A stretch of DNA of 64,000 nt from positions 186,001 to 250,000 of IMG/VR virus record IMGVR_UViG_3300021057_000274. One strand, given 5' to 3'. The notes under the pieces are model-generated. The model had not been told where the DNA came from and made no database searches. It saw only the letters and a list, made by a program, of their open reading frames with translations. Positions 2,271 through 21,357 of this stretch are shown piece by piece; positions within the stretch are counted from its first letter, which is position 1; each line of letters begins with the position of its first letter. The position numbers and the translations under genes were made by a program.

Positions 2271-2624
2271 TTACAAGGTTTGCACGTAGTCCTGGAGAAC
2301 CGTGAGAACCTCGGCCTCGACGCCGGCGAAGTAGTTGTTTAGAGTCGCGATCTCGAGCTTGTAATCTAGGTCCTTCTTCTGGATCTCCTCAGGATTCCAG
2401 TAGAAGAGCCGATCTGGATCGATCAGCTGCCCCTCAGCGTTGAACGCTGACGCGGGCGGCGCGCCGTTGACTTGATAGAGCTTTCCGTCATGCACGTAGA
2501 GGACGTAAGAGTACCTCTGATCTGGCTTGTGGCACGCCACGACGACGTCGCCCTCTAGGGGAGCTCCCAAAAAGGCCTCTAGATCAGCTCTAGAGGACCA
2601 TGCACCAAAGTATGAGTCCATCAC
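2271..2624 (-). CDS. Hypothetical protein
   Basis: 117-aa ORF coupled to the methyltransferase gene by an overlapping stop/start; normal composition. Confidence 0.7.
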   Translation of the reverse strand: MMDSYFGAWSSRADLEAFLGAPLEGDVVVACHKPDQRYSYVLYVHDGKLYQVNGAPPASAFNAEGQLIDPDRLFYWNPEEIQKKDLDYKLEIATLNNYFAGVEAEVLTVLQDYVQTL

Positions 2625-3253
2625 TTCTCCTTAAAGTTTTCGCTCATCCAGTCAGAGCCTCGTCCTGGCTTATGAACCTTGACGAAGACCTGGATCTCCT
2701 CGCTGATGTTGTTCAGCGTGTTGAGCTTCATGATGAGCTCTTGCTGTCCTAACATTCCCTGCTTCACCTGCTCTAGCCAGTGCGGCATGATCAACGGCTC
2801 AACTCCGTCTTGAGGGACCTCGAGATCAATCCCATGGATGAGACCCAACGGTGTCGTCGGTAGCCCACGATCGTGGTCCGAGATGTTTTGCCTCTGGTCG
2901 AAGAGCGTGAACGTGCGATGGGTCAGCAGCCTCTTGTGCGTCGGGTCCGAGACCGCGTTGTCGCAGTTCCAGTGAGGAAGCATGATCACCCACTCGGCGC
3001 CAGGAGCGCTGGCGCGGTACATCTCCTTGATGACCTCGATGAAGTGATTCGACGAGTCACCTAGATGCTCGAGGATGTGGAACGCTCGGATCTTCCTGAA
3101 GCGACTCGTCTCCCACGGCCACGGCGTCTTCTCGAGATCGACGACCTCGTCAGGCCTGAATCGCGGCTCGATGTCGACGTTCAAGTAACCTGGCTGCTTG
3201 TTGAAGCCACAGCCGAGGTTGAGCTTGTCGTAAGCTTCTACCTCCCTGATCAC
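2621..3253 (-). CDS. Class I SAM-dependent methyltransferase (Methyltransf_11-like)
   Basis: KLNLGCG motif I, LNVDI, VVDLE..PWPW, HILEHL, DPTHKR. Confidence 0.85.
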   Translation of the reverse strand: MIREVEAYDKLNLGCGFNKQPGYLNVDIEPRFRPDEVVDLEKTPWPWETSRFRKIRAFHILEHLGDSSNHFIEVIKEMYRASAPGAEWVIMLPHWNCDNAVSDPTHKRLLTHRTFTLFDQRQNISDHDRGLPTTPLGLIHGIDLEVPQDGVEPLIMPHWLEQVKQGMLGQQELIMKLNTLNNISEEIQVFVKVHKPGRGSDWMSENFKEK

Positions 3254-5178
3254 GTCATCGTGCTCCAGAAGATCTGTCGGCTGTACTGGTCGGTCAAGTC
3301 AAGGCCGATCACCGCGACGGTGTTGATCTCGGCCTTCCGGATCGCGGGTTGATAGTCATGCTCCTCAAGGCCGATGAAGCTTCCGATGCGGTTAAGCTGC
3401 GTCTTCGGCGTGCCGCAGAGCTTCTGGTAATCGACGAAGAGCATGTTTGGCTTAAAGCCCTGAATCGTCGCGTCGAGGAGCATCGCGTGAGCTGCTCCCA
3501 TGCGCCCCTCCGGCTTCGCGTAGTGGTAGCATCGAGCGGCGATGCTGCCTCCTTCTCCGACCGCTCGGTCAGCTTCCTGGATCTTGAACGGATTGTCTCT
3601 GCGCTCGAGCTCTAGAGCCGAGAGAATCTCGGCCGGGTTGCGCACGGGGCAGATCACCTTGAAGTCATCTCCGAGCACTCGCTTGAGGACGTGGAGCTTC
3701 GACAGCCATCCCACGCTCTTCGTGACCACGACCGGGTGGTCAAAGCCGACGTAGTAGCTGTCGAGCAAGCCACGCAGAACCGACGCGCGTTGCTCGTAGC
3801 TCATCCTGACCTCAGATTCGGGCATGCCGTAGAGGAGGCTCGTGAAGAGCTGCTCGAGGCAAGAGAGGTCGTCGATGAGAACGTCTGGATGATCCATCAA
3901 TCCACGCATGATCAGGTTGGCGCCGCTCTTGGGGAGACCCGCGACGAAGACAAATTTTCGGCTTGGCTTCTTCGAGTTGCTCCTGTAGTCATCCCTCTCG
4001 AGATCGTTTTGCATCGTCAAGGCTCCGTCATTTGATTGCAAGGGCACGGCCGCCATCCGACCGCGCTCAGGCCTAACCTCTGCGGGGGCTTGGATGAAGG
4101 CGCCGTAGTGCCGCTCCTCCGCGTTATAGTCCACGTGCGTGCCTGCTAGCTGATATTTGGCTATCAGCTCGTCGTGAAGCTGGTTGAAGGTGTCCCCCCA
4201 CCTAGCGAACTCTTGTTGCCTGAAGACGCGCGCCGTCTTGTACCAGGGACTAGTCTGGCTTCCGTACGCCCAAGTGTGGTAGGGCAAGATCGGAACGATC
4301 ACCCACGTCTCCTTGCCCAGAGACGCTGAGACGTGCGCGATGCTCGTGCACGAGGTGATCACGAGGTCGAGGTTCATGATCGCCGCGGCGGTGTCCTCCC
4401 AGCTTAGCATGAGGTGCTGGAGATCGTTGATTCCCTCGGGGAGCTCACGCAGGTCATTGTCACGCTGCAAGCTGTAGACCTGAAGCTCAGGGTAGTTGAC
4501 GAGGTCGATCAGCGGCTCAGCGGGGAACTTTCGAAACTGCTGGTGCTCAAACTTTGGGTTGCCACTCCATCGGATGCCGACCTTGATCTTGTCTGAGGTG
4601 ATGAGGCTCTTCCAGATCTCCATCGACTCTGGCTTCGCGGTGAGGAAGGGCTCGTTCGGAAGGTTCTCGAAGGTGTGTCCGCAGACCCAACATGCTGAGA
4701 ACCCGGGCAGCCAAAAGTCATGCCTCGTCTCGCCTGTCTCCTCATGGCTGATCAGCTCGTCGATGAACGGAACTCGCTTGAGCAAACAATGGATCGACGG
4801 ATCTGCTGCGACGATCACCGTCGCGCCCATCTTCTTCAGCGACTCGGCGAAGCGCACCTGGATGATCTCGTCGCCGATCCCGCCCTCCAGGTTGAGAAGG
4901 ATGCGTTTTCCCTCGATCGGTTGAGACGGATGCCAGATCGACTTGGTCGTTCTGATCATCCCAGAACCGTAGACGTTGACGAATCGCCCTGATTCTAGAG
5001 CTTGAAAGCCCTCTTGAAAGCGTCCCTGGTTGAGGAGGAACCAACCGCGGTTAAAGGTGTGACGTACGTGGGTCGGGTCACTCTGGTCGAGCATGCGCTC
5101 GAGCTCTTCCGAGATCTCCCAAGCCTTGTCAAACTCACCGCGGATCATCAGGTTTAGCTGTTGATCTATCGGATGCAT
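3250..5178 (-). CDS. TPR + GT-B glycosyltransferase (GT9-like) + C-terminal sulfotransferase-fold fusion
   Basis: TPR-like FNRGWFLLNQGRFQEGF; EGGIGDEIIQVRF; WEDTAAAIMNLDLVITSCTSIAHVSASLG; then FVAGLPKSG (PAPS-loop-like) and CPVRNPAEILSA. Confidence 0.85.
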   Translation of the reverse strand: MHPIDQQLNLMIRGEFDKAWEISEELERMLDQSDPTHVRHTFNRGWFLLNQGRFQEGFQALESGRFVNVYGSGMIRTTKSIWHPSQPIEGKRILLNLEGGIGDEIIQVRFAESLKKMGATVIVAADPSIHCLLKRVPFIDELISHEETGETRHDFWLPGFSACWVCGHTFENLPNEPFLTAKPESMEIWKSLITSDKIKVGIRWSGNPKFEHQQFRKFPAEPLIDLVNYPELQVYSLQRDNDLRELPEGINDLQHLMLSWEDTAAAIMNLDLVITSCTSIAHVSASLGKETWVIVPILPYHTWAYGSQTSPWYKTARVFRQQEFARWGDTFNQLHDELIAKYQLAGTHVDYNAEERHYGAFIQAPAEVRPERGRMAAVPLQSNDGALTMQNDLERDDYRSNSKKPSRKFVFVAGLPKSGANLIMRGLMDHPDVLIDDLSCLEQLFTSLLYGMPESEVRMSYEQRASVLRGLLDSYYVGFDHPVVVTKSVGWLSKLHVLKRVLGDDFKVICPVRNPAEILSALELERRDNPFKIQEADRAVGEGGSIAARCYHYAKPEGRMGAAHAMLLDATIQGFKPNMLFVDYQKLCGTPKTQLNRIGSFIGLEEHDYQPAIRKAEINTVAVIGLDLTDQYSRQIFWSTMT

Positions 5179-5184
5179 CTTGAG

Positions 5185-5213
5185 ACTATAACCTCACGGA
5201 GCTATCAGGTAAA
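5185..5213 (-). promoter_or_regulatory. Sigma70-like promoter TTTACC-17-TATAGT, leaderless, driving the glycosyltransferase operon
   Basis: The -10 hexamer ends 6 nt before the ATG at 5178; 17-nt spacer counted. Confidence 0.6.
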
Positions 5214-8200
5214 TTTTAGCGGAAGATACGGTGGCCTAAACGAGGTAGAGTGGTAACGCGCTGCTCCCTTCGTGACGCGCACGCCGGCGAACGCGCCGTT
5301 GTGATGCGCGGAGGTGCCGTTGGCGGAGCCGCCGATGGTAAACACGGGGGTACTTGCGATGTTAGAAGTGTCGATTCCTTGGCCTCGTAGAACTCCGTCG
5401 ATCCAAACGCGTACTAGCCCGAGGTGACGTTGACATACGATGTGATACCACTTGTTAAGTGTCGGAGTGAAATCGTTGAAGATGATGACGCTGTTCGTTT
5501 GGTGCCAGAGGATCCAACCACCCGCTGGATCGTATCTCGTGAAGGCCCACCCGTTATTTGCGTTCCAATTATAGTTGCAAGCGCCGAAGATGTGCACGTC
5601 AGCGGTGGACGAGTAAGAGGCCCAGGACACGAAAGCTTCTGCCGTGTAAGAGCCGGTGCCGAAGTCAAAGTCCGCCGAGGTAGAAGCGACCTCTAAGCGA
5701 CTTGTCCCGTTTAGAACTACGCTCCTCGCCGCCCCCTCCGGCGGGCTAGCGTCGGACCACACGACGGTTCCAGTCGTCGACAGAGCGCGCGCGTGCCTCG
5801 ACTGGTCGATGAACGTTGATCCGGTGCCGTTCTCGTTCGCCATGATCAAGACGGTGCTGTCATATTGCGGGTCGAGCACAAAGGACTCACCTGGAATTCC
5901 AGTGATGCCGTATCCCGACAAGACCGTGCCGCCGATCTTCCCAAACTTGACGGTCGTGATCGCGGTCGGCGTTGATCTGGTCGTGACAGACCCGTCTCCC
6001 AATTGCCCCGACGAGTTGGACCCCCAACCGAAGAGCGCTCCGTCGGCTCTCAGCGCGTGAGTCCAGTTCACTCCGGTCACGACGTCAACGAACTTCATGT
6101 TCTCGAGGCCGAGCGGCTGGACAGGGATGGGGTTGAACGACAGCGAGGATCCGTTACCGATCTGCGCGCTAGCGTTGTCACCCCACGCGAAGAGCTTTCC
6201 GTCTGAGCGCTTCGCGTACGTCGTCGAGTGGAGAGTCGCGATCGCGACCCAAGATGAAGTTCCGATCTGGATCGGTGATGAGCGATTGGTGAGGGTAGCG
6301 TCGCCTAGTTGATACAGAGAGTTCAATCCCCAGGCGAAGAGCGCTCCGTCAGAGCGGATCGCTACCGTATGTGACGTCGCGGCCGAAACTGCTGTCCACG
6401 ACGATGAACCGATCAACACCGGAGAGGAGCGCGAGGTCGTTGACCCGTCACCGAGCTGCCCGGATCCGTTAACCCCCCACGCGAAGAGAGCGCCGTCGAT
6501 GCGAATCGCCATGGAGGTGGTTGAGCCAGCACATACAGCCGTCCACGACGAAGTACCGATCTGGATCGGAGACGACTTAGGAGTGGTAGTGTTGTCACCG
6601 AGCTGCCCGCTTCCGTTACCGCCCCACGTGAAGAGCGCGCCGTCAGAGCGGATCGCTAGAACGTGCGACGTGCCGCCGCTGACGGCGGTCCACGACGAGG
6701 TGCCGACCTGCACAGGAGACGAGAAAGATGTAGTGCTTCCAAGGCCCAACCGTCCATCGTTTCCGATTCCCCACGAGAATAATCCGCCATCGGTGCGGAT
6801 CGCGTACGACGAGCCGCCGAAGCCAGACTCACCACCGTTTGAGATCGCGGTCCACGACGACGCACCGATCTGTACGGGAGAGGATCTAGCTCCAAGAGTT
6901 CCCTGGCCAAGTTGCCCCCAAGTGTCGATCCCCCACGCGAAGAGCAGACCGTCGTCGCGGATCGCTGTCATGTGATCATATCCAGCCGCGATCGCGATCC
7001 AAGAGCGCTCATCTAGCTTCGTTGGGAAGACGTACGATAAGCCGACCGTGGCACCCACAGACTTGTGGTCGCCGATGTGTCCAGAGGTGTTGTACCCCCA
7101 GAGGAAGAGCTTTCTGTCACCGCGAATCGCGGCGGCGTGGCTGATCGATTTCGTAGCGGATGGGAGGGCGTGCCAGCTCTCCGTACCAACCTGGATCGGT
7201 GAGCTAACGCGATGTGTCAAGACGCCGAGCTGGAAGCTCGCGTTACTCCCCCACACGAAGAGTGCGCCGTCAGAGCGGACCGCGGCGGTGTGGGAGCCGG
7301 TCGAGACCGCTGCCCAAGAGTTAACTCCCACTTGCACTGGGGATGACTCGTGTGAGTACTCGCTTGACTTACCGAGCTGCCCGAAGGAGTTGTCACCCCA
7401 AGTGAAGAGCGCGCCGTCAGAGCGGATCGCCGCCATGTTAGAGGCGTAGCTCCCAGAGATCATGACCCAGCTGCTCTTCGTCACTGGATCCCCGCTCGGC
7501 ACCAGGACCGGGGAAGACATGGTTGCGCTAGAGAGGGTGCCGAGCATGCCGCTAAGGTCGACGCCCCACGTGAAGAGCGCGCCGTCAGAGCGAATCGCTG
7601 ACGGCGTCGAGGTAGACGAACCAGTACCGATGAACGTCCAAGAGCTTGTGCCGATCTGCACCGGTGATGACTTGATAAAGCCAGTGATGGTAGCACCATG
7701 CCCCAGCTGTCCGTTTTGTCCGTCGCCCCAGGTAAAGACCGCTCCGTCGGTGCGAATCGCGAGAGAGGTGTGCTTAGCAGCTCCGACCATCGTCCAACTT
7801 GAGGTACCGATCTGCACCGGCGATGACTTAGTTACGGTAGATAGGTCACCGAGTTGCCCGGTGCCGTTGTAACCCCACGCGAAGAGAGCCCCGTCGGAGC
7901 GGATCGCGAGAGAGTGGTCGCTCCCCCCAGCGATCGCCGTCCAGGATGACGATCCGATAGGCACCGGTGAGGAGCGGTTCGTCGTCGACCCGTCACCTAA
8001 TTGTCCAGTTAAGTTGAGTCCCCACGTGAAGAGCGCGCCGTCAGAGCGGATCGCGATCGTGTGAGAACCTCCGCCAGAGATCGCTGTCCACGACGACGAA
8101 CCGATCTGTACCGGTGACGAGGTGTTGCTAGGAGACTCGTTTCCAAGTTGTCCCGCGTTATTCAACCCCCACGCGAAGAGCGCTCCGTCGGTTCGAATCG

Positions 8201-11200
8201 CGAGAGAGTGAGTACCCCCAGCAGAAACCGCGGTCCAGCTTGAAGATCCCAGTTGAATCGGAGAGTTGATGTTTCCTGCCGAACCGTTCCCGATCTGGCC
8301 GTTCGACCCAGCTCCCCATGCAAAGAGGCCGCCATCGGTGCGGAGAGCGATCGCGTGGTTGGCGCCCTTCGAAACGGCCGTCCAAGAGCTAGATCCGCCG
8401 ATTAACACCGGAGACGACTTAGCGACCGAGGTGCCGTCACCCAGCTGGTTGATCGAGTTATTGCCCCAACCCCAGAGTGACCCGTCGCTCTTGATTCCTG
8501 TGGATGAATCCGCTCCAGTTGAGACCTTTGACCAGCTTCTAAATTGTCCGAGAACCGTTGGGAATGACTTGTTCACGCGGATCCACTGTCCGTGCACGCC
8601 CTGAGTGCTGTTACCCCAGGTCATGAGAGCACCGTCGCTCCTGATCGCGCCGATGACCCGATCTCCCGCGGACACCGCGACGAAGCTCGAGGGGGTACGC
8701 TGGTGATTGTTGCCGAGCTGCCCCTTGCCCTCCGCCCCCATCGCGAAGAGACGTCCGTCGGTGCGGATCATGTAGCGAACTGACTGGTTCGTGTCGGCGT
8801 CAAGGTTGCTAGATCCGACCGCCGTCCAGCTAGATGACCCGATCTGTGTCGGGACGCTGTAGTTGACTCCAGAGCTGTCGATGTTTTCGACGGTGGAGTT
8901 GAAACCCCAAGCGAACAGCGCCCCATCGGCTCTCCGCGCGATCGTACCCGGAGCGTACGTCGCGACCGCTGTCCAAGAGTGAGAGCCGCTCACTAGCACC
9001 GGGGACGAGACAGCGGCGTTTGAGTTATTGCCGAGCTGGCCGTTAGTTCCAAACCCCCACGCGAACATCGCGCCGTCCGTGCGGATCGCGTGACCGTGGT
9101 CACCTGAGGTCGCCACGGCGGTCCAGCTTGAGGTTCCACCGATGAGGACCGGCGAGGACCTCGACGTGCTGCTGCTGTCTCCGAGCTGGCTGGAAAAGTT
9201 TGAGCCCCAGCCGTAGAGAGCGCCGTCTGAGCGGATCGCGTACGTCATTCCCTGGTTCGAGATCGTTGACGCTGCGACCGCGGTCCATGATGACGTGCCC
9301 ACCTGGGTCAAGAGCTTAGAATAGATGTTCGGAAAGTCAGAGAGACCTAGAGATGAGGGGCCGCCTCCCCACACGAAGATCGCGCCGTCGGTGCGGATCG
9401 CGGCCGTAGAGATGTCGAGCGCGGCGACGGCTGTCCAGGAGGAGGAGCCGATCTGCACGGGTGACGACTTGCTCACCGTCGTGCCGTCACCGAGGCGGCC
9501 GGTAGACCCGACGCCCCACGTGAAGAGCGCCCCGTCGGATCGGAGCGCGGCGGTGTGAAAGTTTCCGGTCGTGACGGCCGTCCAGCTCGAGGTGCCGATG
9601 CTCACGGGGCTCTGTTGAGTGACGATCGTGCCGTCACCTAGCTGACCGCTTCCGTTGTTCCCCCACGCGAAGAGCCGTCCGTCTGAGCGGATGCCCATCG
9701 CGTGCGACGGACCAGCCGCGAGAGCCGTCCACGACGAGGTGCCGACTTGCATCGGTGATAAAACGGTGCCAGGAGTGCCAGCTCCGAGCTGTCCTGAGTC
9801 GTTTGATCCCCAGCCGAAGAGAGCTCCCCCGAACCGGATTCCGTGACCCGTGGTGTATCCGATGCCGAGCGCCGTCCACGACGACGAGCCGATCTGCACG
9901 GGGGAAGACTTGTTAACTTGGGTGCCGTCGCCGAGCTGTCCGACTGAGTTATTCCCCCAGCCGAACAACGCTCCGTCGGAGCGAATTCCGATCGCGAACG
10001 GTGTAGAGGCGTGGAGACAGGTTGTTCTGATCGCGGTCCACGACGACGAGCCGATCGATACTGGCGAGGACCGGTTCGTCGTCGTACCGTCACCGACGGC
10101 GCCGCTTCCGTTGTAACCCCAGCAAAAGAGGGCGCCGTCGGTACGGATCGCGCCGACGGTGCCCATGTTGCCGCCGAAGCCAGAAGAGACAAATGTCCAA
10201 GACGACGTACCGACTTGAACTGGTGATGACCTCGCCCCGTTGGAGTCACCTAACTCCCCGCCGTCACCTGTCCCCCAGGTGAAGAGCCCGCCGTCTGTTC
10301 GGATCGCGAGAGTGTAGTATCCTCCGCACGCGACCATCGTCCACGAGGAGGTGCCGATCTGTACTGGCGAGAGCACGTTTCCAGAAGACGATCCGTTCCC
10401 CAAGCGACCTCGGTTAGCTGTCCCCCAAGTAAAGAGCGCTCCGTCGGAGCGGATCGCGGCGCTGTGAGCGTCACCGTTTGCGGTGTTTCCTCCGCCAGAG
10501 ATCGCCGTCCACGAGGAGGTGCCGATCTGGACGGGTGATGACCTGTTGGTTTGTGAACCGTCGCCAAGCTGTCCAGTGCTGTTCCACCCCCACGTGAAGA
10601 GGGCACCGTCGGAGCGAATCGCGACCATGTGCGAGCTACCTGCAGAGACCGCCGTCCACGATGACGTGCCGATCTGCACGGGTGACTGCTTGAAAGCGCT
10701 CGTCCCGTCACCTAACTGACCAACGTCATTGGTACCCCAGGTGAAGAGCGCGCCGTCAGACCTGATCGCACAGGTAAAGTTTCGTCCGCCGGCGATCGCC
10801 GTCCAGCTGCTTGCACCTACAGCGAGAGGCGACGTATGATAATTCGCGTTACCGATCTGCCCAAAGTCGTTATTTCCCCAACCGTAGAGGGCGCCGTCCG
10901 AGCGAATCGCGAGCGAGAACGAGGTGCCAGCTCTGACCGCGGTCCACGAGGAGACGCCGATCTGTACGGGGGAAGACTTGTTAACTTGCGTGCCGTCGCC
11001 GAGCTGACCGACGTTGTTCATTCCCCACGTGAAGAGCTTGCCGTCATTGCGGATCGCGAGGGTGTGGGCTAGTCCGAGTGAAACCGCGGTCCAGCTCGTG
11101 TCCCAACCTACCAGGGTTGGGGATGATTGATTCGTCGTCGCGTTGATTCCCAGCTGACCGTTTGCGTTGGCGCCCCACACGAAGAGCTTTCCGTTGGAGA

Positions 11201-14222: not shown

Positions 14223-16843
14223 TTACTCCACCGTTTCAGATACTTGAGGGCTCTGTCTAACACCGCGGCCGTGAGATCCGTAAACGACCATCCGCTGTTG
14301 TTGCCACCGTTGACCGAGTGCGCTCCTGCGTACCAGGTCCCAGGTTGCACCGTCGACCTGCTGATCGACAGCCAATCGGTCACTACTCTCCCAACCGTCC
14401 TCTTGACGAGAGTGTGACTTGCCGCGGTGAGACTTCCGATAGTTACCAACTTTCCTGGCTCGCCCCTTACGTTCCAAGTATTTACCGTTGTGGTAGAACC
14501 GGCAGTGAAGCGGAGAGTCTGCGGGGGAGTTGTAACGGAGATCGAGTCAAACGTGTTATTTCCGACGAAATCAAGTCCGCTGTTGGGCGTGTCGCAAGAA
14601 AAAGCTATGGCTGGCCAAGTCTTGCCTCCACCCCTAAACTGTCGCGGGTTCGTCGTGTTTCCGGCGACCTCTAGAGTCCAAGAGTGAGGCTTGACCGTCA
14701 AGTTCGTCGCCGTGTCAAAGTCGAGAACGTTCTCGGCGTCCGTTGACATGGTCGTGAGCTTTCCGCCAGACGCCGATGACCTTATCTCTCGTAAGTTCGC
14801 GTTGTTCGACAAAAACTTTCCGACCGTGAGCTTCTTTCCGTTCAAGTCAACGATTCCTTGAGTGAGCGTAAACGCCCACAGGTCAGGGCTCATCGTGATG
14901 TTGTCTCCGAGCGTCAACGTGCTTCCCGACGAGTTATACGTGATGGGTCGCCTGAAGGCTACTCCATTAGAGGTGATCGTGCTAGACGGTCCAGCGAACC
15001 CAACAGCCGTAGAATCTGACGTGACGGTCATGGTCGGTGAGAGAGTCAAGTTACCGATGATGGTCAGCGCGAACGTGGGGACGCCCATCGTCCCTGAGAA
15101 ACCAGTAAAGTTGAGGTTGCTGCAATTGCCCACTTGCGGGATTACCGTGTCTGATCCTGCGGTAACGTTCATGAAGAGGTTCGCGTGACCCCCGCCGTGG
15201 ATCGTCCGAGTACCAGTAGACCCGCTGTAGGTGAAGTTGACATTGACGACGTCGTTTGCGGTGACCGGGCTGTTAGCGTTGAAGACGTTGGTATTGTTGC
15301 CAGTGATGTTGATCTGCCCGCCAGCCGCGGTGACCGAATGTCCAAATGACCCGTTGCTGTACCAACCAGTGATCGTCAGCGTCTTTCCGTTGAGGTCGAG
15401 AGTGCCGCTCGTGACCGTGGTCGAGAGGTTAATGTTCCCGGTGAGCGTCGCGTTATCGCTCAACTTCAACGTCGTTCCCATCGTGAACTGCCAGTTGGCT
15501 GGCCAAGTTTTACCCGCGGAGGTGATGTTCTGGGTCGTCCGCCCCTGAAAGAGAACGTCGGTGCCAGTAAGCGAAGCGTTAGAGTCAAGCGTGACGTCGC
15601 CGAGGAAGACTGGCTGCTGGCTAAAGTTAAGCGTAAATGTCTGGTCGGTGCCAGAACAGAGAAGATTGCCGATCCCGACGTTTGAGATGTTGATCGTGAC
15701 CGTTTGCCCGTTCGCTGAGAAGCTGCTCGCGTCAAAGACAACCGTGTCTTGAGGCAGCGGAAAGTTGTTCGCGTCGGTCGCTCCGTTGCTAGATGTCGCC
15801 CAACGGTTCGACGCGTTCCAGTTTCCGGTTCCACCCACCCAAAACTTGTCAACTCCCGTAGTGAAGGTGATCCCCGAGTTTCCCTTGAGATCACCGACCC
15901 GCGTACCTGACCAGGTCGCCGCCCCAGCTCCAGTGACGTCTCGGAAATCAACGTCGGTCAGCGACACCGCTGCGGCGGTAAGCGTTCGAGCGGTGCCGAT
16001 CGTGTTGGAGCGCACGAGCCACCTCTCGGTCGCGGCGAAGGGCTGCGGAAACGACAATGTACCGTTGATCGTTTGATTTGCCTCAAGCGAGAGCTCAGCG
16101 CCCCACACTCCGACCCGCTCAAAGGTGAGGTTGTTGAACGTGTTTGTCCCGCTGATCGACCTAACGTTGGGGGTAGCCGTGTTCGTGAAGCTCACGTTGT
16201 GAAAGGTGCGTCCGTTGCCGCGAAAGAGAGCCGACGATGATGACATGTTGATCGTCGATGTTCCGGCGTTTAGAGTGGGAGCTGATCCGTTGGTGAAGTC
16301 GAGGTTGCTCGTAACCGTGACCGTGGACGCCCCTAACGTCAACGTGCCAGATCCCCCGGAGTTGTTGAGGGTAGCTACGGTGAGCGTTTGTCCGTTGGTG
16401 TCAAAGGTGCCAGTTCCGATCGTCAGGGCAGCTCCGATCACTCCTGCGTCTTGCATGGTCCACGTCCCAGCACCTAGCGTAGTGACTGTACCGGCGATCG
16501 TTTTGCCGTTGAAGGTGATCGTGTGGGATCCTGTTCCTCTGAGAGCTTTAGTCGCGCTGTGAGTGAATGTCATCCCGGATCCGAGCGTCAGGTTTCCGTA
16601 GATGTCAACGCCGTCAGAGCCTTGGAACGTTCCCGTGAAACCCGTGAAATTGAGGTTAGCGCAAGTGAGCGGTCCGTTTTCGGTGCCCACGGTGACCGAG
16701 CCGCTGTTTCCGTCAAAGAACACGTTGTCGGTCGAGGTGGGTCTTGAGGCCCCACCGGTGCCGCCGGTGGAGGTCGCCCACAGCGACCCGTCAGAGGTGC
16801 CGCTCCAGTTAGCTGATCCGCCTACCCAGTATCTGTCGGCCAT
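14219..16843 (-). CDS. Beta-helical Thr/Gly/Asn-rich fibre/adhesin-like protein
   Basis: Two copies of (R/K)(Y/F)WVGGxxNW..WATS..P..DxVxFD; autotransporter-passenger-like beta-strand repeats. Confidence 0.75.
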   Translation of the reverse strand: MADRYWVGGSANWSGTSDGSLWATSTGGTGGASRPTSTDNVFFDGNSGSVTVGTENGPLTCANLNFTGFTGTFQGSDGVDIYGNLTLGSGMTFTHSATKALRGTGSHTITFNGKTIAGTVTTLGAGTWTMQDAGVIGAALTIGTGTFDTNGQTLTVATLNNSGGSGTLTLGASTVTVTSNLDFTNGSAPTLNAGTSTINMSSSSALFRGNGRTFHNVSFTNTATPNVRSISGTNTFNNLTFERVGVWGAELSLEANQTINGTLSFPQPFAATERWLVRSNTIGTARTLTAAAVSLTDVDFRDVTGAGAATWSGTRVGDLKGNSGITFTTGVDKFWVGGTGNWNASNRWATSSNGATDANNFPLPQDTVVFDASSFSANGQTVTINISNVGIGNLLCSGTDQTFTLNFSQQPVFLGDVTLDSNASLTGTDVLFQGRTTQNITSAGKTWPANWQFTMGTTLKLSDNATLTGNINLSTTVTSGTLDLNGKTLTITGWYSNGSFGHSVTAAGGQINITGNNTNVFNANSPVTANDVVNVNFTYSGSTGTRTIHGGGHANLFMNVTAGSDTVIPQVGNCSNLNFTGFSGTMGVPTFALTIIGNLTLSPTMTVTSDSTAVGFAGPSSTITSNGVAFRRPITYNSSGSTLTLGDNITMSPDLWAFTLTQGIVDLNGKKLTVGKFLSNNANLREIRSSASGGKLTTMSTDAENVLDFDTATNLTVKPHSWTLEVAGNTTNPRQFRGGGKTWPAIAFSCDTPNSGLDFVGNNTFDSISVTTPPQTLRFTAGSTTTVNTWNVRGEPGKLVTIGSLTAASHTLVKRTVGRVVTDWLSISRSTVQPGTWYAGAHSVNGGNNSGWSFTDLTAAVLDRALKYLKRWSK

Positions 16844-16844
16844 C

Positions 16845-19769
16845 TTATCCGACTCTCCGGACGATCTTCGCTAGGTTGGGATCATAGCCGGTACCCATCA
16901 GCCCTGACGTGTCCGAGCCAAACGCGAAGAGCTTCCCCTGAGAGTCGATCGACATGTTGATCGCGGAGCCGTAAGCCGTTTTCGCCCAGTCGGTCTTCGC
17001 GCCGATCTGAACTGGTGACGACTTGGAGGAGAGAGATCCGTCCCCGAGGGCGCCTTGGGATGCGCTGCCCCACGTAAAGAGCGCGCCGTCGGTGCGGATC
17101 GCTGCAACTCCGCTGATGTGGGCGCTCACCGCGGTCCATGACGAGGATCCCACCTGGATCGGTTCGCTCCAAAAGGTTGAGTGATTCACTCCGAGCTGTC
17201 CGCTTCCGTTACCGCCCCATGTGAAGAGCGCACCGTCGGAGCGAATCGCCGCGACGATGCTTGAGCTAACTCCCACAGATGTCCAGCTAGAGGTACCTAC
17301 CTGCACCGGCGACCGCGGACCCGTTGACGTGAAGTTGCCGTACTTTGACCCCGAGAGAGAGTTGTTGTTGTCGCCCCAGATGAAGAGCTTCCCCGACCTG
17401 ATCGCTAGGCTAGTTGACCTCGCTCCACAGATCGCTGTCCAGTCGGTCGCTGCGCTGATCGCGATCGGGCTGTTGACGTTGTTGGTGTTGCCGTCTCCCA
17501 CCTGTCCCATTCCCCCTTGCCCCCACCCGAAGAGCACGCCGTCATAACGGATTCCTAGAGCGTGGTTCGTCCCGGGGCCAACCGTTCTCCACCCGAGGGT
17601 GCCGACCTGAGTCGGCGAGCTCCTGGTAGAGGTGTCCCCCACCCCGAGCTCTCCGCTCGTGTTCATCCCCCAACCAAAGAGATTGTTTGACACGACGAAC
17701 GCGGTAGCTGACGGAGTGAAGTTCGCGGTGTAGAGCGCCCTCTTGACGATCCGCACCTCATCGATGTAGCCGTTGATCGTATACCCTGACGCCTCATCTA
17801 ACCCACCGATCTTGAAGGGCTTCGACGAGTTATTGATCGTGTCGTTGATAGTTCCAGTAGTGCCTAGCTGGGTGCCGTCGACGAAGAGATAGAGGTTAGA
17901 TCCTGAGCGGCACACCGCGACGTGATACCAAGTGTCGGTTGACCAGGTGAAATCGCGCGCGTATACGTTGACGTTAGTTCCATCCGTTGACCACAGAAAC
18001 GCGAGACCGTTTCCTGTGGTGTCTGCCTCGTTGAGAAATTGGAAGTTCCAAGCTCGGTTAAGTCCGCTCACGCTCCCTAGCTGGTCGACGATCAACGCGT
18101 TCTTTCCAGGTGCTCCGATGTGCCTCACCCACGCTTCGACCGTGAAGTCACCGCTGCCCAGGGAAAAGTCAGGGTGATCTGGCGTCGAGAAGTAGCTCGA
18201 GCTCCCGTTGAACTTCGCGGACGTCTCGCCGAATTTTGCGTGTTCGGTCGAGATCGTCGCGCTGCTCCCAGCGGTGAAGACCTTTCCCTTGATCGAGTCA
18301 ATCGAGTTGGTGGATCCTCCGGCTTCATCGAAGTGCATGAGGAGAACCTCGGCGTTATCTCTGATCGCGTAGAACGAGCTTCCTCCTGGAGAGCTTCCGA
18401 CGAACGACCACGAGCTCGTTCCGATCTGCACCGGGCTAGATCGAGATGCTCCAGCGTCGCCGAGAGCTCCGTTGGTGCTAGATCCCCACGTAAAGAGCGC
18501 ACCGTCGGAGCGAATCGCCGCAGAGTTTAAGTCGCCGCACGCTACCGCAATCCACGAGGAAGTTCCGATCTGAACGGGTGACGACCTGGAGGTGGTGGTG
18601 CCGTCCCCGAGACGGCCGACTCCTGCTCCGTTTTGCCCCCACGCAAACAATCCCCCGTCAGAGCGGATCGCTAACGTGTGATTTGTTCCTGTCGAGATCG
18701 CGGTCCAGCTAGAGGTGCCAACCTGCACCGGAGAAGATCGTGGGGTAGTGTTTCCGTTCCCCAGCTCGCCGTTAGAGTTTCCGCCCCACGTGAAGAGTCC
18801 GCCGTCTTGCCTGATCGCGACGCAATATGAGGAGCCGTTGGCTACCGCCGTCCATGACGAGGACCCGATCTGGATCGGGCTGAAAGCGTCTAGGATCGCG
18901 GAGTTTCCGATCTGCCCGCTAGTTCCGAGTCCCCACGCGAAGAGGGCACCGTCGGAGCGAATCGCCACGATCGTTGAGCCTCCGTGGACCGCTGTCCACG
19001 ACGACGCTCCGAGCTGCGGGCCGGGCCTCCTTCTCAAGTGAATTTCAGCGGGAACAACGTAGCCTGGAACGTCTGATCCCCAGATGAAGAAGCCTCCGTC
19101 CGACCGGATCGCCCCCATGCAAGAGGACTCAAATGAAGATGAGACCGCGGTCCAGGATGACGTTCCGACCTGAACCGGAGATGACCTCGCGGTGTTATCG
19201 TTCAGCCCGAGAATGTCACCTGACCCCCACGTAAAGAGACCGCCGTCCGAGCGGATCGCCGCGGTGGCTGAGGGCCCGCACACGACCGCCGTCCACGACG
19301 ACGTGCCGATCTGGACGGGTGATGACCTGTTGGTTTGTGAGCCGTCCCCTAGCTGTCCGAGGCCGTTCGCTCCCCACGCGAAGAGGGCGCCGTCGGAGCG
19401 AATCGCCGCGGTGTGAGCCCCACCCACGGAGACCGCCGTCCACGACGAAGATCCCACCTGAGTCGGGAGATAGACCTGAGCGACCATGCCCAGCGGAGAG
19501 ATCTGTGACAGGTAACCAAGTTGGCCAGAGGTGTTGAACCCCCACGTGAAGAGAGCGCCGTCGGAGCGGATCGCGGCATGATGGCCGCCGATCGACGAGG
19601 GCGCCACGCTCAACCACTGGGTGCCAGGCATGAGCTCGAAGGGCTCCTTGCGGGCCGTGGAGGAGGCGCCGTCTGGCAAGAACCCCGCGTTGTTGTTCAG
19701 TCCGCCCCACGCGTAGAGCTGTCCGGCATCCTTGCCGGTAGATGCCGGGGGATTGTTGAAGATCGGCAT
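16845..19769 (-). CDS. RCC1-repeat protein with an internal LamG domain (974 aa)
   Basis: Start revised to ATG at 19769 (TAATG overlap with upstream stop). Same RCC1 consensus; LamG LLMHFDE..DFTVEAWV..WYHVAVCR..GYIDEVRI. Confidence 0.85.
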   Translation of the reverse strand: MPIFNNPPASTGKDAGQLYAWGGLNNNAGFLPDGASSTARKEPFELMPGTQWLSVAPSSIGGHHAAIRSDGALFTWGFNTSGQLGYLSQISPLGMVAQVYLPTQVGSSSWTAVSVGGAHTAAIRSDGALFAWGANGLGQLGDGSQTNRSSPVQIGTSSWTAVVCGPSATAAIRSDGGLFTWGSGDILGLNDNTARSSPVQVGTSSWTAVSSSFESSCMGAIRSDGGFFIWGSDVPGYVVPAEIHLRRRPGPQLGASSWTAVHGGSTIVAIRSDGALFAWGLGTSGQIGNSAILDAFSPIQIGSSSWTAVANGSSYCVAIRQDGGLFTWGGNSNGELGNGNTTPRSSPVQVGTSSWTAISTGTNHTLAIRSDGGLFAWGQNGAGVGRLGDGTTTSRSSPVQIGTSSWIAVACGDLNSAAIRSDGALFTWGSSTNGALGDAGASRSSPVQIGTSSWSFVGSSPGGSSFYAIRDNAEVLLMHFDEAGGSTNSIDSIKGKVFTAGSSATISTEHAKFGETSAKFNGSSSYFSTPDHPDFSLGSGDFTVEAWVRHIGAPGKNALIVDQLGSVSGLNRAWNFQFLNEADTTGNGLAFLWSTDGTNVNVYARDFTWSTDTWYHVAVCRSGSNLYLFVDGTQLGTTGTINDTINNSSKPFKIGGLDEASGYTINGYIDEVRIVKRALYTANFTPSATAFVVSNNLFGWGMNTSGELGVGDTSTRSSPTQVGTLGWRTVGPGTNHALGIRYDGVLFGWGQGGMGQVGDGNTNNVNSPIAISAATDWTAICGARSTSLAIRSGKLFIWGDNNNSLSGSKYGNFTSTGPRSPVQVGTSSWTSVGVSSSIVAAIRSDGALFTWGGNGSGQLGVNHSTFWSEPIQVGSSSWTAVSAHISGVAAIRTDGALFTWGSASQGALGDGSLSSKSSPVQIGAKTDWAKTAYGSAINMSIDSQGKLFAFGSDTSGLMGTGYDPNLAKIVRRVG

Positions 19770-20404
19770 TAGTAGTTCTGGCCGACGATCGAGCCCATCC
19801 AGATCGCTCCGCCGTCTAGAGTTTGGAAGCAGTACTGATCGATCTTCCCGTTCGTCGAGGTCGGGGTGGGAGCGACTCCGCCGGCCCAACGCACCGACGC
19901 CGGCCAGGTCCACGCTTGCTGAGTGCCGTTGCCGACGAGAAAGAGCACGACGGTCAAGATTTCGTTGGCGATGTTCGGCACGTTCGTGAACGACAGAGTC
20001 GTCACCGAGCCGGTGTTTGAAACGTAGAAAACGTAGCCGTTCGCGAGGTTGAGAGTGAGCGTGCCGCCGGAGATCGTCGGTGAGCTGTAGATGTAGTTAT
20101 TTTCTCGCGCCGAGACGTCGGTGACGAAGATGTCCTTCGTGCCCGCGGTGAAGTTGACCGCCGCCCCCGCGTTCGAGCTGGCGATGATGACGGTGCGAGC
20201 GAGGTTGTTACCCGCCGTCCAGGTGCCGATCCCCGTCTCCCACTCGCCAGTGGTGCCGTTAACCGCGAAGTAGGGGACGGTGTCGTTGTTGGCCACGATC
20301 GCTGAGTAAGCGCGATAGCCCGTCTTGGCTCCCGCGAGAGCGAAGGTGCCGGTACCTGTGGTGGTGCTAGTTTCCCAAACGCGATCGCCAGTCTTGCGTG
20401 CCAT
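19769..20404 (-). CDS. Tail-fibre anchor/adaptor protein
   Basis: N-terminal DRVWETSTTTGTGTFALAGA and C-terminal WPASVRWAGGVAPT..D..F.T.DGG..W.G, both common in phage fibre proteins; late promoter upstream. Confidence 0.7.
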   Translation of the reverse strand: MARKTGDRVWETSTTTGTGTFALAGAKTGYRAYSAIVANNDTVPYFAVNGTTGEWETGIGTWTAGNNLARTVIIASSNAGAAVNFTAGTKDIFVTDVSARENNYIYSSPTISGGTLTLNLANGYVFYVSNTGSVTTLSFTNVPNIANEILTVVLFLVGNGTQQAWTWPASVRWAGGVAPTPTSTNGKIDQYCFQTLDGGAIWMGSIVGQNY

Positions 20405-20448: not shown

Positions 20449-21357
20449 TTACCTAACTGGAATCTCGATCTGGAGGTTCTTGGTGACGTTCAGCTCGATG
20501 TAGTTGAGCTTGGCGATCGCGAGGAGCGCGTGACGATCATCGGCGGGAATGACCTGGAGATCGACTAGGGAAACTCGCGGGTCCCGATTGAAGACCTGCT
20601 CGAGGTCGCTGCGGATGACCTGGTGAGTCGTAGGATCTGAGATCTCGAAGGTCGTGATCGGAATCCGGGTACCGAAGCTGTCGACCATGCGAAGACGATC
20701 GCCGCGAGCGGTGAAGATTTCGTTGAGCAGATCCTCCTCGACGCAGTCGATGTTGTAGATCGAAAAGGCCCCGCCGTCCTCGTAGTTGCGGGTGGTGAAG
20801 CCCTTGTAGAACTTCGTGAAGACCGGGGTTGAGCCTGGGAGCTGAACAGGTTGGGCTTGGCTCGCGAGGGGATCTCTCGGCTGAACCAGGTTGAACGGGG
20901 TCAAGATCGGGGTGAAGTCCTCACGACGTCCGACCGCCGCCGCGGTGCCAGCAGCGAGCGCCGCTCCGAGCGACTCGGCGAGCGCGTTCGAGAAGCCAAC
21001 GACGGTGGTGAGGCCGTCACCAGAGAAGTCGACCTCGAGGCCCAGCTGACCGATCGCGCTCATCGCGGCGAGGCCTTGAGACTGACCAGTGAAGCCGGCG
21101 AGCGAGGTCGCCTGCGCGGACGACGTGATCGAGGCTATGGAGCCAGCCTCACCTGCGACCGTTGCGATCGCGACCATGGTCGCGGCAGAGCCAGCGAGAG
21201 CGGTCGCTGACGCGATGACGACTGATTGCGCGATCGCGCCAGAGAGAGCCTGCGAGGTTGATGCGGCTTGCGCCGCCGCAAGCGCGCCTGACAGAGCCTC
21301 CGCCGAGCTAGACGCGGTTACATATCCGGTCGGGTCCCCGGTGAAGAGGAGAAGCAT
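20449..21357 (-). CDS. Second Ala-rich protein fused to a gp25-like domain (paralog of 769..2193)
   Basis: Shares FTKFYKGxTTRNYE, CVEEDLLNEI, LRMVDSFGTRIP, DPRV and NVTKNLQI with 769..2193. Confidence 0.75.
   Translation of the reverse strand: MLLLFTGDPTGYVTASSSAEALSGALAAAQAASTSQALSGAIAQSVVIASATALAGSAATMVAIATVAGEAGSIASITSSAQATSLAGFTGQSQGLAAMSAIGQLGLEVDFSGDGLTTVVGFSNALAESLGAALAAGTAAAVGRREDFTPILTPFNLVQPRDPLASQAQPVQLPGSTPVFTKFYKGFTTRNYEDGGAFSIYNIDCVEEDLLNEIFTARGDRLRMVDSFGTRIPITTFEISDPTTHQVIRSDLEQVFNRDPRVSLVDLQVIPADDRHALLAIAKLNYIELNVTKNLQIEIPVR

What the first reader, a model, noticed from the sequence alone, without database searches (positions are those of the whole stretch)
2271..20404. Candidate virion-fibre glycosylation/modification system: Ser/Thr-rich RCC1 giants plus a TPR-glycosyltransferase-sulfotransferase fusion and a methyltransferase
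Seen: a late operon of fibre adaptor, RCC1-LamG (974 aa), beta-helix (874 aa) and RCC1-LamG (3005 aa), followed directly by a three-domain TPR/GT9-like/sulfotransferase-fold protein and a SAM methyltransferase. The repeats carry a nearly invariant Ser/Thr-dense linker (xSSPVQIGTSSWT) dozens of times. The enzymes have their own sigma70-type promoter (5185-5213), so they could accumulate before the late substrate. Established: TPR-fused GT-B enzymes modify proteins (OGT, flagellin glycosyltransferases), and Aah/TibC heptosylate repetitive Ser sites of adjacent beta-helical adhesins. Inference: the phage glycosylates, and possibly sulfates or methylates, its own appendage. The PAPS loop is atypical (GLPKSGAN), so that domain may be non-catalytic.
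Basis: partly seen in the sequence, partly recalled or inferred. Interest (0 to 1): 0.85.

Follow-up and report, generated by a model that had tools for sequence, protein, structure and literature searches.

The report
Phage fibre glycosylation cassette for RCC1 repeats
A soil jumbo phage carries, directly behind its giant RCC1-repeat tail-fibre genes, a sugar-transferase/sulfotransferase fusion and a methyltransferase. This enzyme-plus-RCC1 pairing recurs in phages and in bacteria, so it looks like an undescribed system that decorates each propeller blade with a modified sugar, although no chemistry has been shown.

Summary
The genes are real and largely as described. On the minus strand lie a tail-fibre-like gene, RCC1-LamG-RCC1 (974 aa), a beta-helix-like protein (874 aa), an RCC1 giant with C-terminal LamG (3005 aa), a 642-aa fusion and a 210-aa divergent class I methyltransferase. 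The fusion has a short helical cap, a GT-B domain closest to the flagellin O-glycosyltransferase FlmG and GT9 heptosyltransferases, and a sulfotransferase with intact PAPS motifs.

The proposed co-occurrence test came out strongly positive:
- In 70 of 75 related viral loci an RCC1 gene ends a median 52 bp upstream of the transferase.
- In 39 of 54 cellular loci (Bdellovibrio, CPR, Planctomycetota and others) an RCC1 gene lies within 3 kb, in varied gene and domain orders.
- The blade motif [ST][ST]P-x7-W marks 70-74% of transferase-linked repeats but 2% of RCC1 repeats from transferase-free genomes.
- Related cassettes add ADP-heptose synthesis genes and an APS kinase.

Not supported: the motif is a strand plus turn inside each blade, not a linker. 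The promoter match is at chance level and leaves no leader. The PAPS loop is not degenerate.

Best reading: cytoplasmic O-glycosylation (probably heptosylation) of RCC1 blades, then sulfation and methylation. This is inferred, not demonstrated.

The parts
19769..20404 (-). 211-aa tail-fibre-like or adaptor protein. It is the first gene of the module.
   Evidence: PHROG tail fibre families, best E 2e-14. Homologues precede the RCC1 gene in about 30 related loci. In T4-like relatives the gene in this position carries Pfam Phage_tail_APC, a tail assembly chaperone.
16845..19769 (-). 974-aa RCC1 - LamG - RCC1 fibre protein. LamG lies at about 17733-18209.
   Evidence: Pfam RCC1 E 6e-87 and Laminin_G_3 E 7e-24. 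RCC1 repeats also lie after LamG. The ATG at 19769 overlaps the upstream stop codon.
14219..16843 (-). 874-aa beta-helix-like fibre or spike protein. It is specific to this phage lineage.
   Evidence: No Pfam or PHROG hit. ESM Atlas feature score is 0.97 to viral 'parallel beta-helix' clusters, with TM 0.45-0.54 to Fil_haemagg-type models. No homologue in 159 related loci.
5205..14222 (-). 3005-aa RCC1 giant with about 42-54 blades and a C-terminal LamG at about 5265-5678. It is the proposed main substrate.
   Evidence: Pfam RCC1 with 42 stretches. Own repeat HMM finds 54 domains. LamG E 7e-12. Residues 1160-1530 model as a 7-blade propeller, pTM 0.88. This and the 974-aa protein are the only RCC1 ORFs in the 389-kb genome.
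4981..5178 (-). Helical cap of the enzyme (residues 1-66, four helices, TPR-like).
   Evidence: DSSP of the model. It aligns with the helices that precede the GT domain in FlmG-like TPR-GT proteins. No Pfam TPR hit.
4153..4911 (-). GT-B glycosyltransferase domain (residues 90-342), FlmG-like and GT9-like.
   Evidence: Foldseek: Caulobacter FlbA/FlmG E 5.7e-17; GT9 3tov 1e-7, WaaF 1psw 5e-7, TibC 4rap 1e-5. Invariant residues include G102, D103, R109, E211, H212, S276, C277, T278 and H282.
3253..3960 (-). Sulfotransferase domain (residues 407-642), joined to the GT by a disordered linker at 3976-4104.
   Evidence: Pfam Sulfotransfer_3, 30 bits against a cut-off of 27. Foldseek top hits are tyrosylprotein sulfotransferases and heparan sulfate 3-O-sulfotransferases. 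GLP(K/R)SG and R513 are conserved.
2621..3253 (-). 210-aa divergent class I SAM methyltransferase ('MT210'), overlapping the stop of the fusion gene.
   Evidence: PHROG 6636 methyltransferase E 8e-14. 19 of 22 family members hit Methyltransf_11. LNLGCG, N25, D27, E62, E77 and R80 are conserved. A homologue is present within 10 kb of the transferase in 77 of 80 viral loci.
5185..5213 (-). Promoter-like match. It is probably not a separate promoter.
   Evidence: 9 of 12 matches. 2 sites observed against 1.1 +/- 1.1 expected. The -10 ends 6 nt before the ATG. The intergenic gap is 26 nt. The median RCC1-GT gap in relatives is 52 bp.
2271..2624 (-). It is not part of the conserved cassette.
   Evidence: No homologue in any of 159 related loci. 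Only a weak PHROG hit, E 1.4e-4.

Best explanation
This is a dedicated substrate-plus-enzymes cassette embedded in the baseplate and fibre operon of a 389-kb soil phage.

Proposed mechanism:
- The RCC1-repeat fibre proteins are made in the host cytoplasm together with a co-transcribed enzyme.
- The enzyme's FlmG-like/GT9-like GT-B domain, with a short TPR-like cap, O-glycosylates serine or threonine residues of the blade motif R-S-S-P-V-Q-(I/V)-G-(S/T)3-W. This happens once per blade, so dozens of times per protein.
- The donor is most likely host ADP-heptose.
- The fused PAPS-dependent sulfotransferase and the neighbouring SAM methyltransferase then decorate the sugar.
- The result is fibres coated with sulfated, methylated glycans.

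Shown by the analyses here: domain identities and folds, conserved cofactor motifs, the transferase-RCC1 linkage across phages and bacteria, the motif's specificity, and donor-supply genes in sister cassettes.

Inferred: that RCC1 is the acceptor, which residues are modified, that the sugar is a heptose, and that sulfate and methyl go on the sugar rather than on the protein.
For: 1. Linkage in viruses. More than 527 IMG/VR contigs encode a relative. In 70 of 75 loci with upstream flank, an RCC1 ORF ends within 400 bp upstream on the same strand, with a median gap of 52 bp.
2. Linkage in phage records. Among 50,697 phage records, 5 hold the transferase and 8 hold RCC1. Four hold both, side by side.
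3. Linkage outside phages. For cellular relatives with at least 33% identity, 39 of 54 have RCC1 within 3 kb. This holds despite changed gene order and reversed domain order. The Bdellovibrio bacteriovorus Bd16 chromosome locus is flanked by housekeeping genes. In one CPR genome all four RCC1 genes lie within 8 kb of the fusion gene.
4. Asymmetry expected of an enzyme and its substrate. RCC1 occurs in 36 of 401 CPR genomes, the transferase in 1.
5. Motif specificity. [ST][ST]P-x7-W is found in 70% of 2052 repeats in viral transferase-linked loci and 74% of 605 in cellular transferase-linked loci. It is found in 2% of 89 repeats from transferase-free genomes.
6. Enzymology. The closest characterised fold is the flagellin O-glycosyltransferase FlmG (PMC7591256). 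GT9 enzymes and the protein heptosyltransferase TibC also match. An HldE-like gene (E 1.4e-80) and an ADP-heptose 6-epimerase (E 1.2e-59, 36% identical to E. coli RfaD) sit in 22-24 of 80 sister cassettes. An APS kinase is present in 17 loci, 16 of which hold a sulfotransferase.
7. On a GT-domain tree, the RCC1-linked proteins form a large group (support 95) separate from the RCC1-free TPR-GT clade.
Against: - No chemical evidence of any modification exists.
- The window protein does not reach Pfam Glyco_transf_9.
- In a weak hhalign match, the residue aligned to WaaC Asp261 is an invariant Cys.
- This genome encodes no sugar-nucleotide or PAPS supply genes of its own.
- 15 of 54 cellular loci, two viral loci and CPR genome G002 lack an adjacent RCC1 gene.
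- All viral relatives form one clade, with 3 clusters at 60% identity, so part of the viral synteny is inherited rather than independent.
- The S/T-rich motif could simply be the signature of the RCC1 subfamily that travels with the enzymes. The S-S dipeptide lies at the start of a beta-strand.
Confidence: 0.55

Rival explanations
1. The enzymes remodel a host or cell envelope glycan (LPS core, capsule or exopolysaccharide), for example for superinfection exclusion or release. The RCC1-LamG fibres are lectins that read such glycans, or are simply neighbours in a recombination-prone host-range module.
For: The GT fold resembles LPS heptosyltransferases WaaF and WaaC. JGI names two homologues ADP-heptose:LPS heptosyltransferase. 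LamG domains are carbohydrate-binding folds. Sister cassettes hold further polysaccharide-type enzymes: GT25, FkbM methyltransferase and a WbuC-like cupin.
Against: Linkage is to RCC1 specifically, not to fibres in general. It persists in non-phage chromosomes and next to small pure-propeller RCC1 proteins without LamG. The best characterised structural match is a protein glycosyltransferase. A transferase-specific S/T motif in the blades has no explanation in this model.
Confidence: 0.15
2. The sulfotransferase and/or methyltransferase act directly on the protein (for example tyrosine or serine sulfation, or side-chain methylation) rather than on a sugar added by the GT.
For: The top PDB matches of the sulfotransferase domain are tyrosylprotein sulfotransferases. 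A host-dependent tail protein methylation needed for infectivity is described in the abstract of PMC13445384.
Against: Scores to heparan sulfate 3-O-sulfotransferases are within about one order of magnitude. The repeat consensus has no conserved tyrosine. The sulfotransferase is optional (39 of 80 loci) whereas the GT is constant, and it is fused to the GT in both orders. That fits sequential action on one product.
Confidence: 0.12
3. The GT-like protein is a non-catalytic chaperone or assembly factor for RCC1 propellers.
For: It lies in a structural operon beside a tail assembly chaperone-type gene. An Asp-to-Cys change sits at a GT9 donor-site position.
Against: About 45 invariant residues cluster in GT9-like motifs, including G-D and the xxTSxAH loop. 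The protein co-occurs with sugar-nucleotide and PAPS synthesis genes. Fusions are to enzymes with intact cofactor motifs.
Confidence: 0.08
4. The adjacency is inherited synteny without functional coupling.
For: All viral relatives form one clade, with 3 clusters at 60% identity.
Against: Adjacency survives gene-order changes, strand changes, domain fusion and fission, and transfer across phyla. It is absent from the sister TPR-GT clade (0 of 10). The background frequency of RCC1 is low: 9% of CPR genomes, anywhere in the genome.
Confidence: 0.05

Closest known systems
FlmG (FlbA) of Caulobacter, the TPR-GT-B flagellin O-glycosyltransferase (eLife 2020, PMC7591256)
   Same: It is the best characterised structural match: E 5.7e-17 over residues 3-341, covering the helical cap plus GT-B domain. 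FlmG is a cytoplasmic enzyme that O-glycosylates Ser/Thr of a filament subunit before assembly, and its TPR part binds the substrate.
   Different: FlmG has a TPR domain of about 310 aa, whereas here there are only four helices. FlmG's acceptor is flagellin and its sugar is pseudaminic acid. Here the neighbour is RCC1, and no CMP-sugar synthetase is encoded in this genome. FlmG-like TPR-GT proteins form a separate clade that is not linked to RCC1. That P21296 FlbA is FlmG is inferred from organism, length (596 aa) and the flbA papers cited in PMC7591256.
Bacterial autotransporter heptosyltransferases TibC and Aah with TibA and AIDA-I (Lu et al. 2014, cited in PMC7591256; PDB 4rap)
   Same: A GT9-like GT-B enzyme is encoded next to a highly repetitive beta-rich surface protein, which it heptosylates many times on Ser in the cytoplasm. 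TibC is a Foldseek hit at E 1e-5. Sister cassettes carry ADP-heptose synthesis genes.
   Different: The substrate fold is a beta-propeller, not a beta-helix. Similarity to TibC is weaker than to FlmG or GT9. The iron-finger and dodecamer features were not tested. Extra sulfotransferase and methyltransferase activities are present.
GT9 LPS heptosyltransferases WaaC and WaaF
   Same: GT-B fold (3tov, 1psw; E about 1e-7). A G-D motif lies in the first domain. A xxT-x-x-x-H-x-x-A-A loop in the second domain aligns with WaaC 257-270.
   Different: No Pfam PF01075 hit. The first domain is shorter. Cys replaces the Asp aligned to WaaC D261. The genomic partner is a protein, not LPS genes.
Mycobacteriophage virion glycosylation (Freeman et al. 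2023, Cell Host Microbe; cited in PMC12619734)
   Same: Phage-encoded glycosyltransferases modify the phage's own structural proteins.
   Different: In that system the glycans sit on the C-termini of capsid and tail-tube subunits. Here the proposed target is an internal motif repeated in every blade of fibre propellers, the transferase family is different, and sulfation and methylation modules are added. The same cassette also occurs in cellular genomes.
Sulfotransfer_3 and tyrosylprotein sulfotransferases
   Same: Pfam membership, fold, and the 5'-phosphosulfate and 3'-phosphate binding motifs.
   Different: The domain is fused to a glycosyltransferase. The acceptor is unknown. Thr-Thr after the P-loop glycine is replaced by Ala-Asn in this copy.

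Membership tests
GT9 heptosyltransferases (Pfam PF01075 / COG0859) | Significant match to the family profile | tested here: not met
   No PF01075 hit at E <= 0.01 for the window protein and no NCBIfam hit. Only 15% of its ESM Atlas cluster carry PF01075. Two homologues are named heptosyltransferase by JGI.
GT9 heptosyltransferases (Pfam PF01075 / COG0859) | GT-B two-Rossmann fold superposable on GT9 structures | tested here: met
   Foldseek 3tov E 1.1e-7 and 1psw E 5.1e-7. WaaU, OpsX and WaaF models match.
GT9 heptosyltransferases (Pfam PF01075 / COG0859) | Conserved catalytic and donor-site residues (WaaC Asp13, Asp261 and His266, recalled from memory) | tested here: inconclusive
   G102-D103 is invariant. 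A weak hhalign match (E 0.014) puts Cys277 opposite WaaC D261 and His282 opposite H266.
GT9 heptosyltransferases (Pfam PF01075 / COG0859) | ADP-heptose as donor | not testable with these tools
   Indirect evidence only. HldE-like and ADP-heptose 6-epimerase genes lie in 22-24 of 80 sister cassettes. None is in this genome.
FlmG-type flagellin O-glycosyltransferases | N-terminal TPR domain plus C-terminal GT-B domain | tested here: inconclusive
   The GT-B and the last helices superpose on FlbA/FlmG. Only four helices are present and there is no Pfam TPR hit.
FlmG-type flagellin O-glycosyltransferases | Flagellin as acceptor and a CMP-nonulosonic acid donor pathway | tested here: not met
   No CMP-sugar synthetase in the genome. 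The neighbour is RCC1. The proteins with FlmG-like architecture form a separate, RCC1-free clade.
BAHT (TibC/Aah) protein heptosyltransferases | Encoded beside a repetitive surface protein that is its substrate | tested here: met
   Adjacency to RCC1 is met in 70 of 75 viral and 39 of 54 cellular loci. That RCC1 is the substrate is inferred.
BAHT (TibC/Aah) protein heptosyltransferases | Iron-finger cysteine motif and dodecameric ring | not tested
   The only CxxC (C163, C166) is not conserved in the family consensus. Oligomeric state cannot be tested here.
PAPS-dependent sulfotransferases (Pfam PF13469) | Profile match above the curated cut-off | tested here: met
   30.0 bits against a cut-off of 27, residues 410-607.
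PAPS-dependent sulfotransferases (Pfam PF13469) | 5'-phosphosulfate loop and 3'-phosphate Arg/Ser motif | tested here: met
   G414, L415, P416 and G419 are at least 90% conserved, with K417 at the R/K position. R513, E517 and E523 are at least 90% conserved among 33 homologues.
Class I SAM-dependent methyltransferases (Methyltransf_11) | Profile match and glycine-rich motif I | tested here: met
   The window copy is below threshold. However, 19 of 22 homologues (31-51% identical) hit PF08241, best 9e-8. LNLGCG is invariant. PHROG methyltransferase E 8e-14.
RCC1 repeat beta-propellers | Tandem repeats of about 50 aa matching PF00415 that fold into 7-blade propellers | tested here: met
   42 and 10 Pfam stretches. 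Model with 28 strands, pTM 0.88.

The most novel reading that the evidence does not exclude
A widespread, undescribed protein-glycosylation system in phages, Bdellovibrionota, CPR bacteria, Planctomycetota and others. In it a FlmG/GT9-related transferase heptosylates every blade of RCC1 beta-propellers at a recognisable sequon, S-S-P-V-Q-(I/V)-G-(S/T)3-W. The sugars are then sulfated and methylated. This would give the first sulfated glycoprotein fibres known on a phage and a predictable bacterial O-glycosylation sequon on a propeller fold.
Probability: 0.35. Interest if true: 0.85.

Novelty: new variant of a known kind. Interest (0 to 1): 0.72.

Why it matters
If true, it adds a second, mechanistically different case of phages glycosylating their own virions. 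The target here would be the receptor-binding appendages, with sulfate and methyl decorations that could affect adsorption, protease resistance or recognition by hosts and grazers.

It would give a function to a large family that is mostly unnamed in the source annotations. The GT domain has 17,505 cluster representatives at E <= 1e-30. It would also help explain why bacterial and phage RCC1 proteins of this subtype carry an almost invariant Ser-rich motif.

Cultured carriers exist, namely Synechococcus phages BUCT-ZZ01 and S-SRM01 and Bdellovibrio bacteriovorus Bd16. The claim can therefore be tested directly.

Tried and rejected
- Direct profile searches of the GT part (Pfam, NCBIfam) and PDB sequence searches gave nothing.
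- Megablast of the region against phage records found no match.
- hhalign of the GT family against single WaaC and WaaF sequences was weak (E 0.014 and 0.031). I used it only to locate the shared loop.
- A planned 2x2 co-occurrence table within the CPR phylum could not be built, because only 1 of 401 genomes has the transferase. I used those genomes as a source of transferase-free RCC1 controls instead.
- A literature search for RCC1 plus phage mostly returned Roscoff Culture Collection strain numbers. No paper in the library describes the pairing.
- Sequencing runs were uninformative. One soil metatranscriptome holds a 253-nt contig inside the RCC1 giant, which says nothing about co-transcription.
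- The L004 221-aa Pfam-positive methyltransferase is not the orthologue of the window's 210-aa gene. The unannotated 200-aa neighbour is.
Full report
**Where the window lies.** The window is bases 186001-250000 of a 389,331-bp IMG/VR virus record, estimated 98% complete. It was found in soil metagenomes. All genes in the finding are on the minus strand. Gp25-like baseplate genes flank them on both sides, at 20449-21357 and 769-2193. The module therefore sits inside the baseplate and fibre operon of a jumbo phage.

**The observation: fibre genes.**
- The 211-aa protein (19769-20404) hits tail-fibre PHROGs.
Its architecture is RCC1, LamG, RCC1.
- The 874-aa protein has no profile hit. It resembles viral parallel beta-helix clusters and filamentous-haemagglutinin-type models in the ESM Atlas.
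- The 3005-aa protein has 42 Pfam RCC1 stretches and a C-terminal Laminin_G_3 domain.
- These two RCC1 proteins are the only RCC1 ORFs in the whole genome.

**The observation: the motif.** Exact SSPVQ occurs 21 and 6 times, spaced 49-50 residues apart. That spacing equals the repeat length, so the motif is not a linker. In an AlphaFold model of residues 1160-1530 (pLDDT 87.3, pTM 0.88, 28 strands forming 7 blades), SSPVQIG is a beta-strand. TSS(W) is the four-residue turn to the next strand.

**The enzymes: the 642-aa fusion.** With a 52-sequence alignment the protein models well (pLDDT 87.7). It has four helices at 3-66, a GT-B domain at 90-342, a disordered linker at 359-401 and a sulfotransferase at 407-642.
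- The GT part has no Pfam, NCBIfam or PDB sequence hit.
- By fold it matches GT9 enzymes (3tov, WaaF) and the protein heptosyltransferase TibC.
- Its best match is Caulobacter FlbA (P21296, 596 aa; E 5.7e-17 over residues 3-341). By organism, length and cited literature this is FlmG, the TPR-GT flagellin O-glycosyltransferase.
- AlphaFold DB fold clusters and the ESM Atlas show the same cap-plus-GT unit in many bacterial TPR proteins. They also show it in a mainly viral 344-aa cluster.
- The family has about 45 invariant residues, including G102-D103 and S276-C277-T278...H282. The latter loop aligns weakly with the WaaC donor-site loop, with Cys opposite WaaC Asp261.
- The sulfotransferase domain passes the Pfam cut-off. 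It keeps GLP(K/R)SG, Arg513, Glu517 and Glu523. It is closest to tyrosylprotein and heparan sulfate sulfotransferases. It does not look inactive.

**The enzymes: the 210-aa protein.** It belongs to a family in which 19 of 22 members hit Methyltransf_11, and it keeps the LNLGCG motif. The 117-aa ORF at 2271-2624 is not conserved in any related locus.

**The promoter.** The site at 5213-5185 exists, but such matches occur at the chance rate (2 observed, 1.1 +/- 1.1 expected). Its -10 hexamer ends 6 nt before the ATG, downstream of the only GAGG, and the whole intergenic gap is 26 nt. In relatives the median RCC1-GT gap is 52 bp. Co-transcription with the fibre genes is the simpler reading.

**Co-occurrence in viruses.**
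- Homologues of the GT unit occur alone (about 353 aa) or fused to a sulfotransferase, methyltransferase, TPR or GT25 domain.
- Four long metagenomic phage contigs all show an RCC1 giant followed by the GT. This includes T4-like phages where the cassette lies between a tail assembly chaperone gene and gp13/14/15.
- Among 50,697 phage records, 5 hold the GT and 8 hold RCC1. Four hold both side by side, namely BUCT-ZZ01, S-SRM01 (two records) and AG-345-E08.
- IMG/VR holds more than 527 contigs with a relative. Of the best 80, 75 have upstream flank. In 70 of these an RCC1 ORF ends within 400 bp upstream on the same strand. Two more lie at 542 bp, one is downstream, and two have other large proteins instead.
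- The 210-aa methyltransferase family is present within 10 kb of the GT, usually just downstream, in 77 of 80.

**Co-occurrence in cellular genomes.**
- 79 loci were recovered from Bdellovibrionota, CPR phyla, Planctomycetota, Methylococcaceae and others.
- For GT identity of at least 33%, 39 of 54 loci with enough flank have RCC1 within 3 kb. For identity below 33%, 0 of 10 do.
- Gene order varies (RCC1 then GT, or GT then methyltransferase then RCC1). A reversed sulfotransferase-GT domain order also occurs.
- The Bdellovibrio bacteriovorus Bd16 chromosome locus is flanked by DsbD, a pseudouridine synthase and an EamA transporter, not by phage genes.
- In CPR genome G001 all four RCC1 genes lie within 8 kb of the fusion gene. 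In G002 they are dispersed.
- RCC1 is far commoner than the GT: 36 against 1 of 401 CPR genomes. That fits an optional modifier of a subset of RCC1 proteins.
- On a GT-domain tree the RCC1-linked proteins form one large group (support 95). The RCC1-free TPR-GT proteins with FlmG-like architecture form a separate clade.

**The motif as a candidate sequon.** I aligned repeats to one repeat HMM built from the window.

| Repeat position | GT-linked, viral | GT-linked, cellular | GT-free CPR genomes |
|---|---|---|---|
| 23 | Ser 84% | Ser 79% | Ser/Thr 26% |
| 24 | Ser 84% | Ser 88% | Ser/Thr 45% |
| 33 | Trp 90% | Trp 97% | Trp 28% |

The composite [ST][ST]P-x7-W is present in 70%, 74% and 2% of repeats respectively. 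The 375-aa CPR RCC1 protein next to the fusion carries NRSSPVQVGSLT(T/S)W in all seven blades. Because the HMM came from the window, any alignment bias should favour controls that resemble the motif. This shows that the motif marks the GT-linked RCC1 subfamily. It does not prove that the motif is the acceptor.

**Donor and decorations.** Counts below are for genes within 10 kb of the GT in the 80 viral loci.
- Sulfotransferase in 39 loci.
- APS kinase in 17 loci, 16 of them in loci that hold a sulfotransferase.
- GT25 in 42 loci.
- FkbM-type methyltransferase in 22 loci.
- HldE-like genes in 24 loci and an epimerase in 22.

The HldE-like protein scores E 1.4e-80 to HldE. The epimerase scores E 1.2e-59 to ADP-glyceromanno-heptose 6-epimerase and is 36% identical to E. 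coli RfaD. This points to ADP-heptose as donor and PAPS as sulfate source. The window's own genome lacks such genes and would depend on the host.

**Mechanism.** The best-supported model is cytoplasmic O-glycosylation, probably heptosylation, of each RCC1 blade by the FlmG/GT9-like domain. Sulfation and methylation of the sugar would follow, before fibre assembly. The steps are inferred from linkage, folds and pathway context, and none has been observed. Rival explanations are envelope-glycan remodelling, direct protein sulfation or methylation, a chaperone role, and inherited synteny. They are weighed in the Rival explanations section.

**Comparison and novelty.** The system works like TibC/Aah with their adhesins and like FlmG with flagellin. 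It fails or only partly meets membership tests for GT9, FlmG and BAHT. Phage self-glycosylation is known from mycobacteriophages (Freeman et al. 2023, cited in PMC12619734). That case involves different enzymes, targets and chemistry. No paper in the searchable library describes an RCC1-GT cassette. I rate it a new variant of a known kind, with interest 0.72.

Noticed in passing
window 769-2193 and 20449-21357: Two different proteins with gp25-like baseplate-wedge domains (474 aa and 302 aa) flank the fibre-enzyme module on either side.
   Followed up: no
L010:12567-13361; L013:2219-3019; L006:13404-14237: The APS-kinase-like gene of sister cassettes is a protein of about 265 aa. An N-terminal adenylyl-sulfate kinase P-loop is followed by a nucleotidyltransferase-like region. 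It may be a compact phage PAPS-supply enzyme.
   Followed up: partly
L007:3031-4095; L011:4386-5407: In both CPR genomes TatC and TatA genes lie just upstream of the GT-sulfotransferase fusion. This hints that the RCC1 proteins there might be exported folded.
   Followed up: no
L172, L178 (Planctomycetota); proteins P0121-P0146: The GT domain also occurs in tandem. There are 7-8 hits per locus, and giant proteins of 1,200-3,100 aa carry 3-6 copies. The domain family as a whole has 39,571 representatives at E <= 0.001.
   Followed up: no
window 6324-6576 and 6475-6657: A 253-nt contig identical to part of the RCC1 giant is present in a soil metatranscriptome run. Contigs of the DNA runs break and rejoin inside the repeats, so the exact repeat count of the 3005-aa gene rests on the assembly.
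   Followed up: partly
L004:13138-14397 and 11914-12579: The 365-kb relative carries a second, diverged GT paralogue (419 aa, 29% identical) and an extra Pfam-positive methyltransferase. The orthologue of that methyltransferase in this genome lies 47 kb upstream of the window.
   Followed up: partly
L142, L143, L145, L147, L150, L154, L155, L159, L161, L164: Cellular homologues have the reverse domain order, with the sulfotransferase N-terminal and the GT C-terminal. Most are still next to RCC1.
   Followed up: partly
L066:3-2780; L087:7887-9968: In the two viral loci without RCC1, the GT and the 210-aa methyltransferase family lie in one open reading frame. A different large protein lies upstream (DUF6242 in L066). 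These may be alternative substrates.
   Followed up: partly
G231:C1:126797-135556 (locus L195): One CPR genome has RCC1 repeats inside an open frame of 17,510 aa. Several other CPR genomes have RCC1 frames of 2,000-5,900 aa without the transferase.
   Followed up: no
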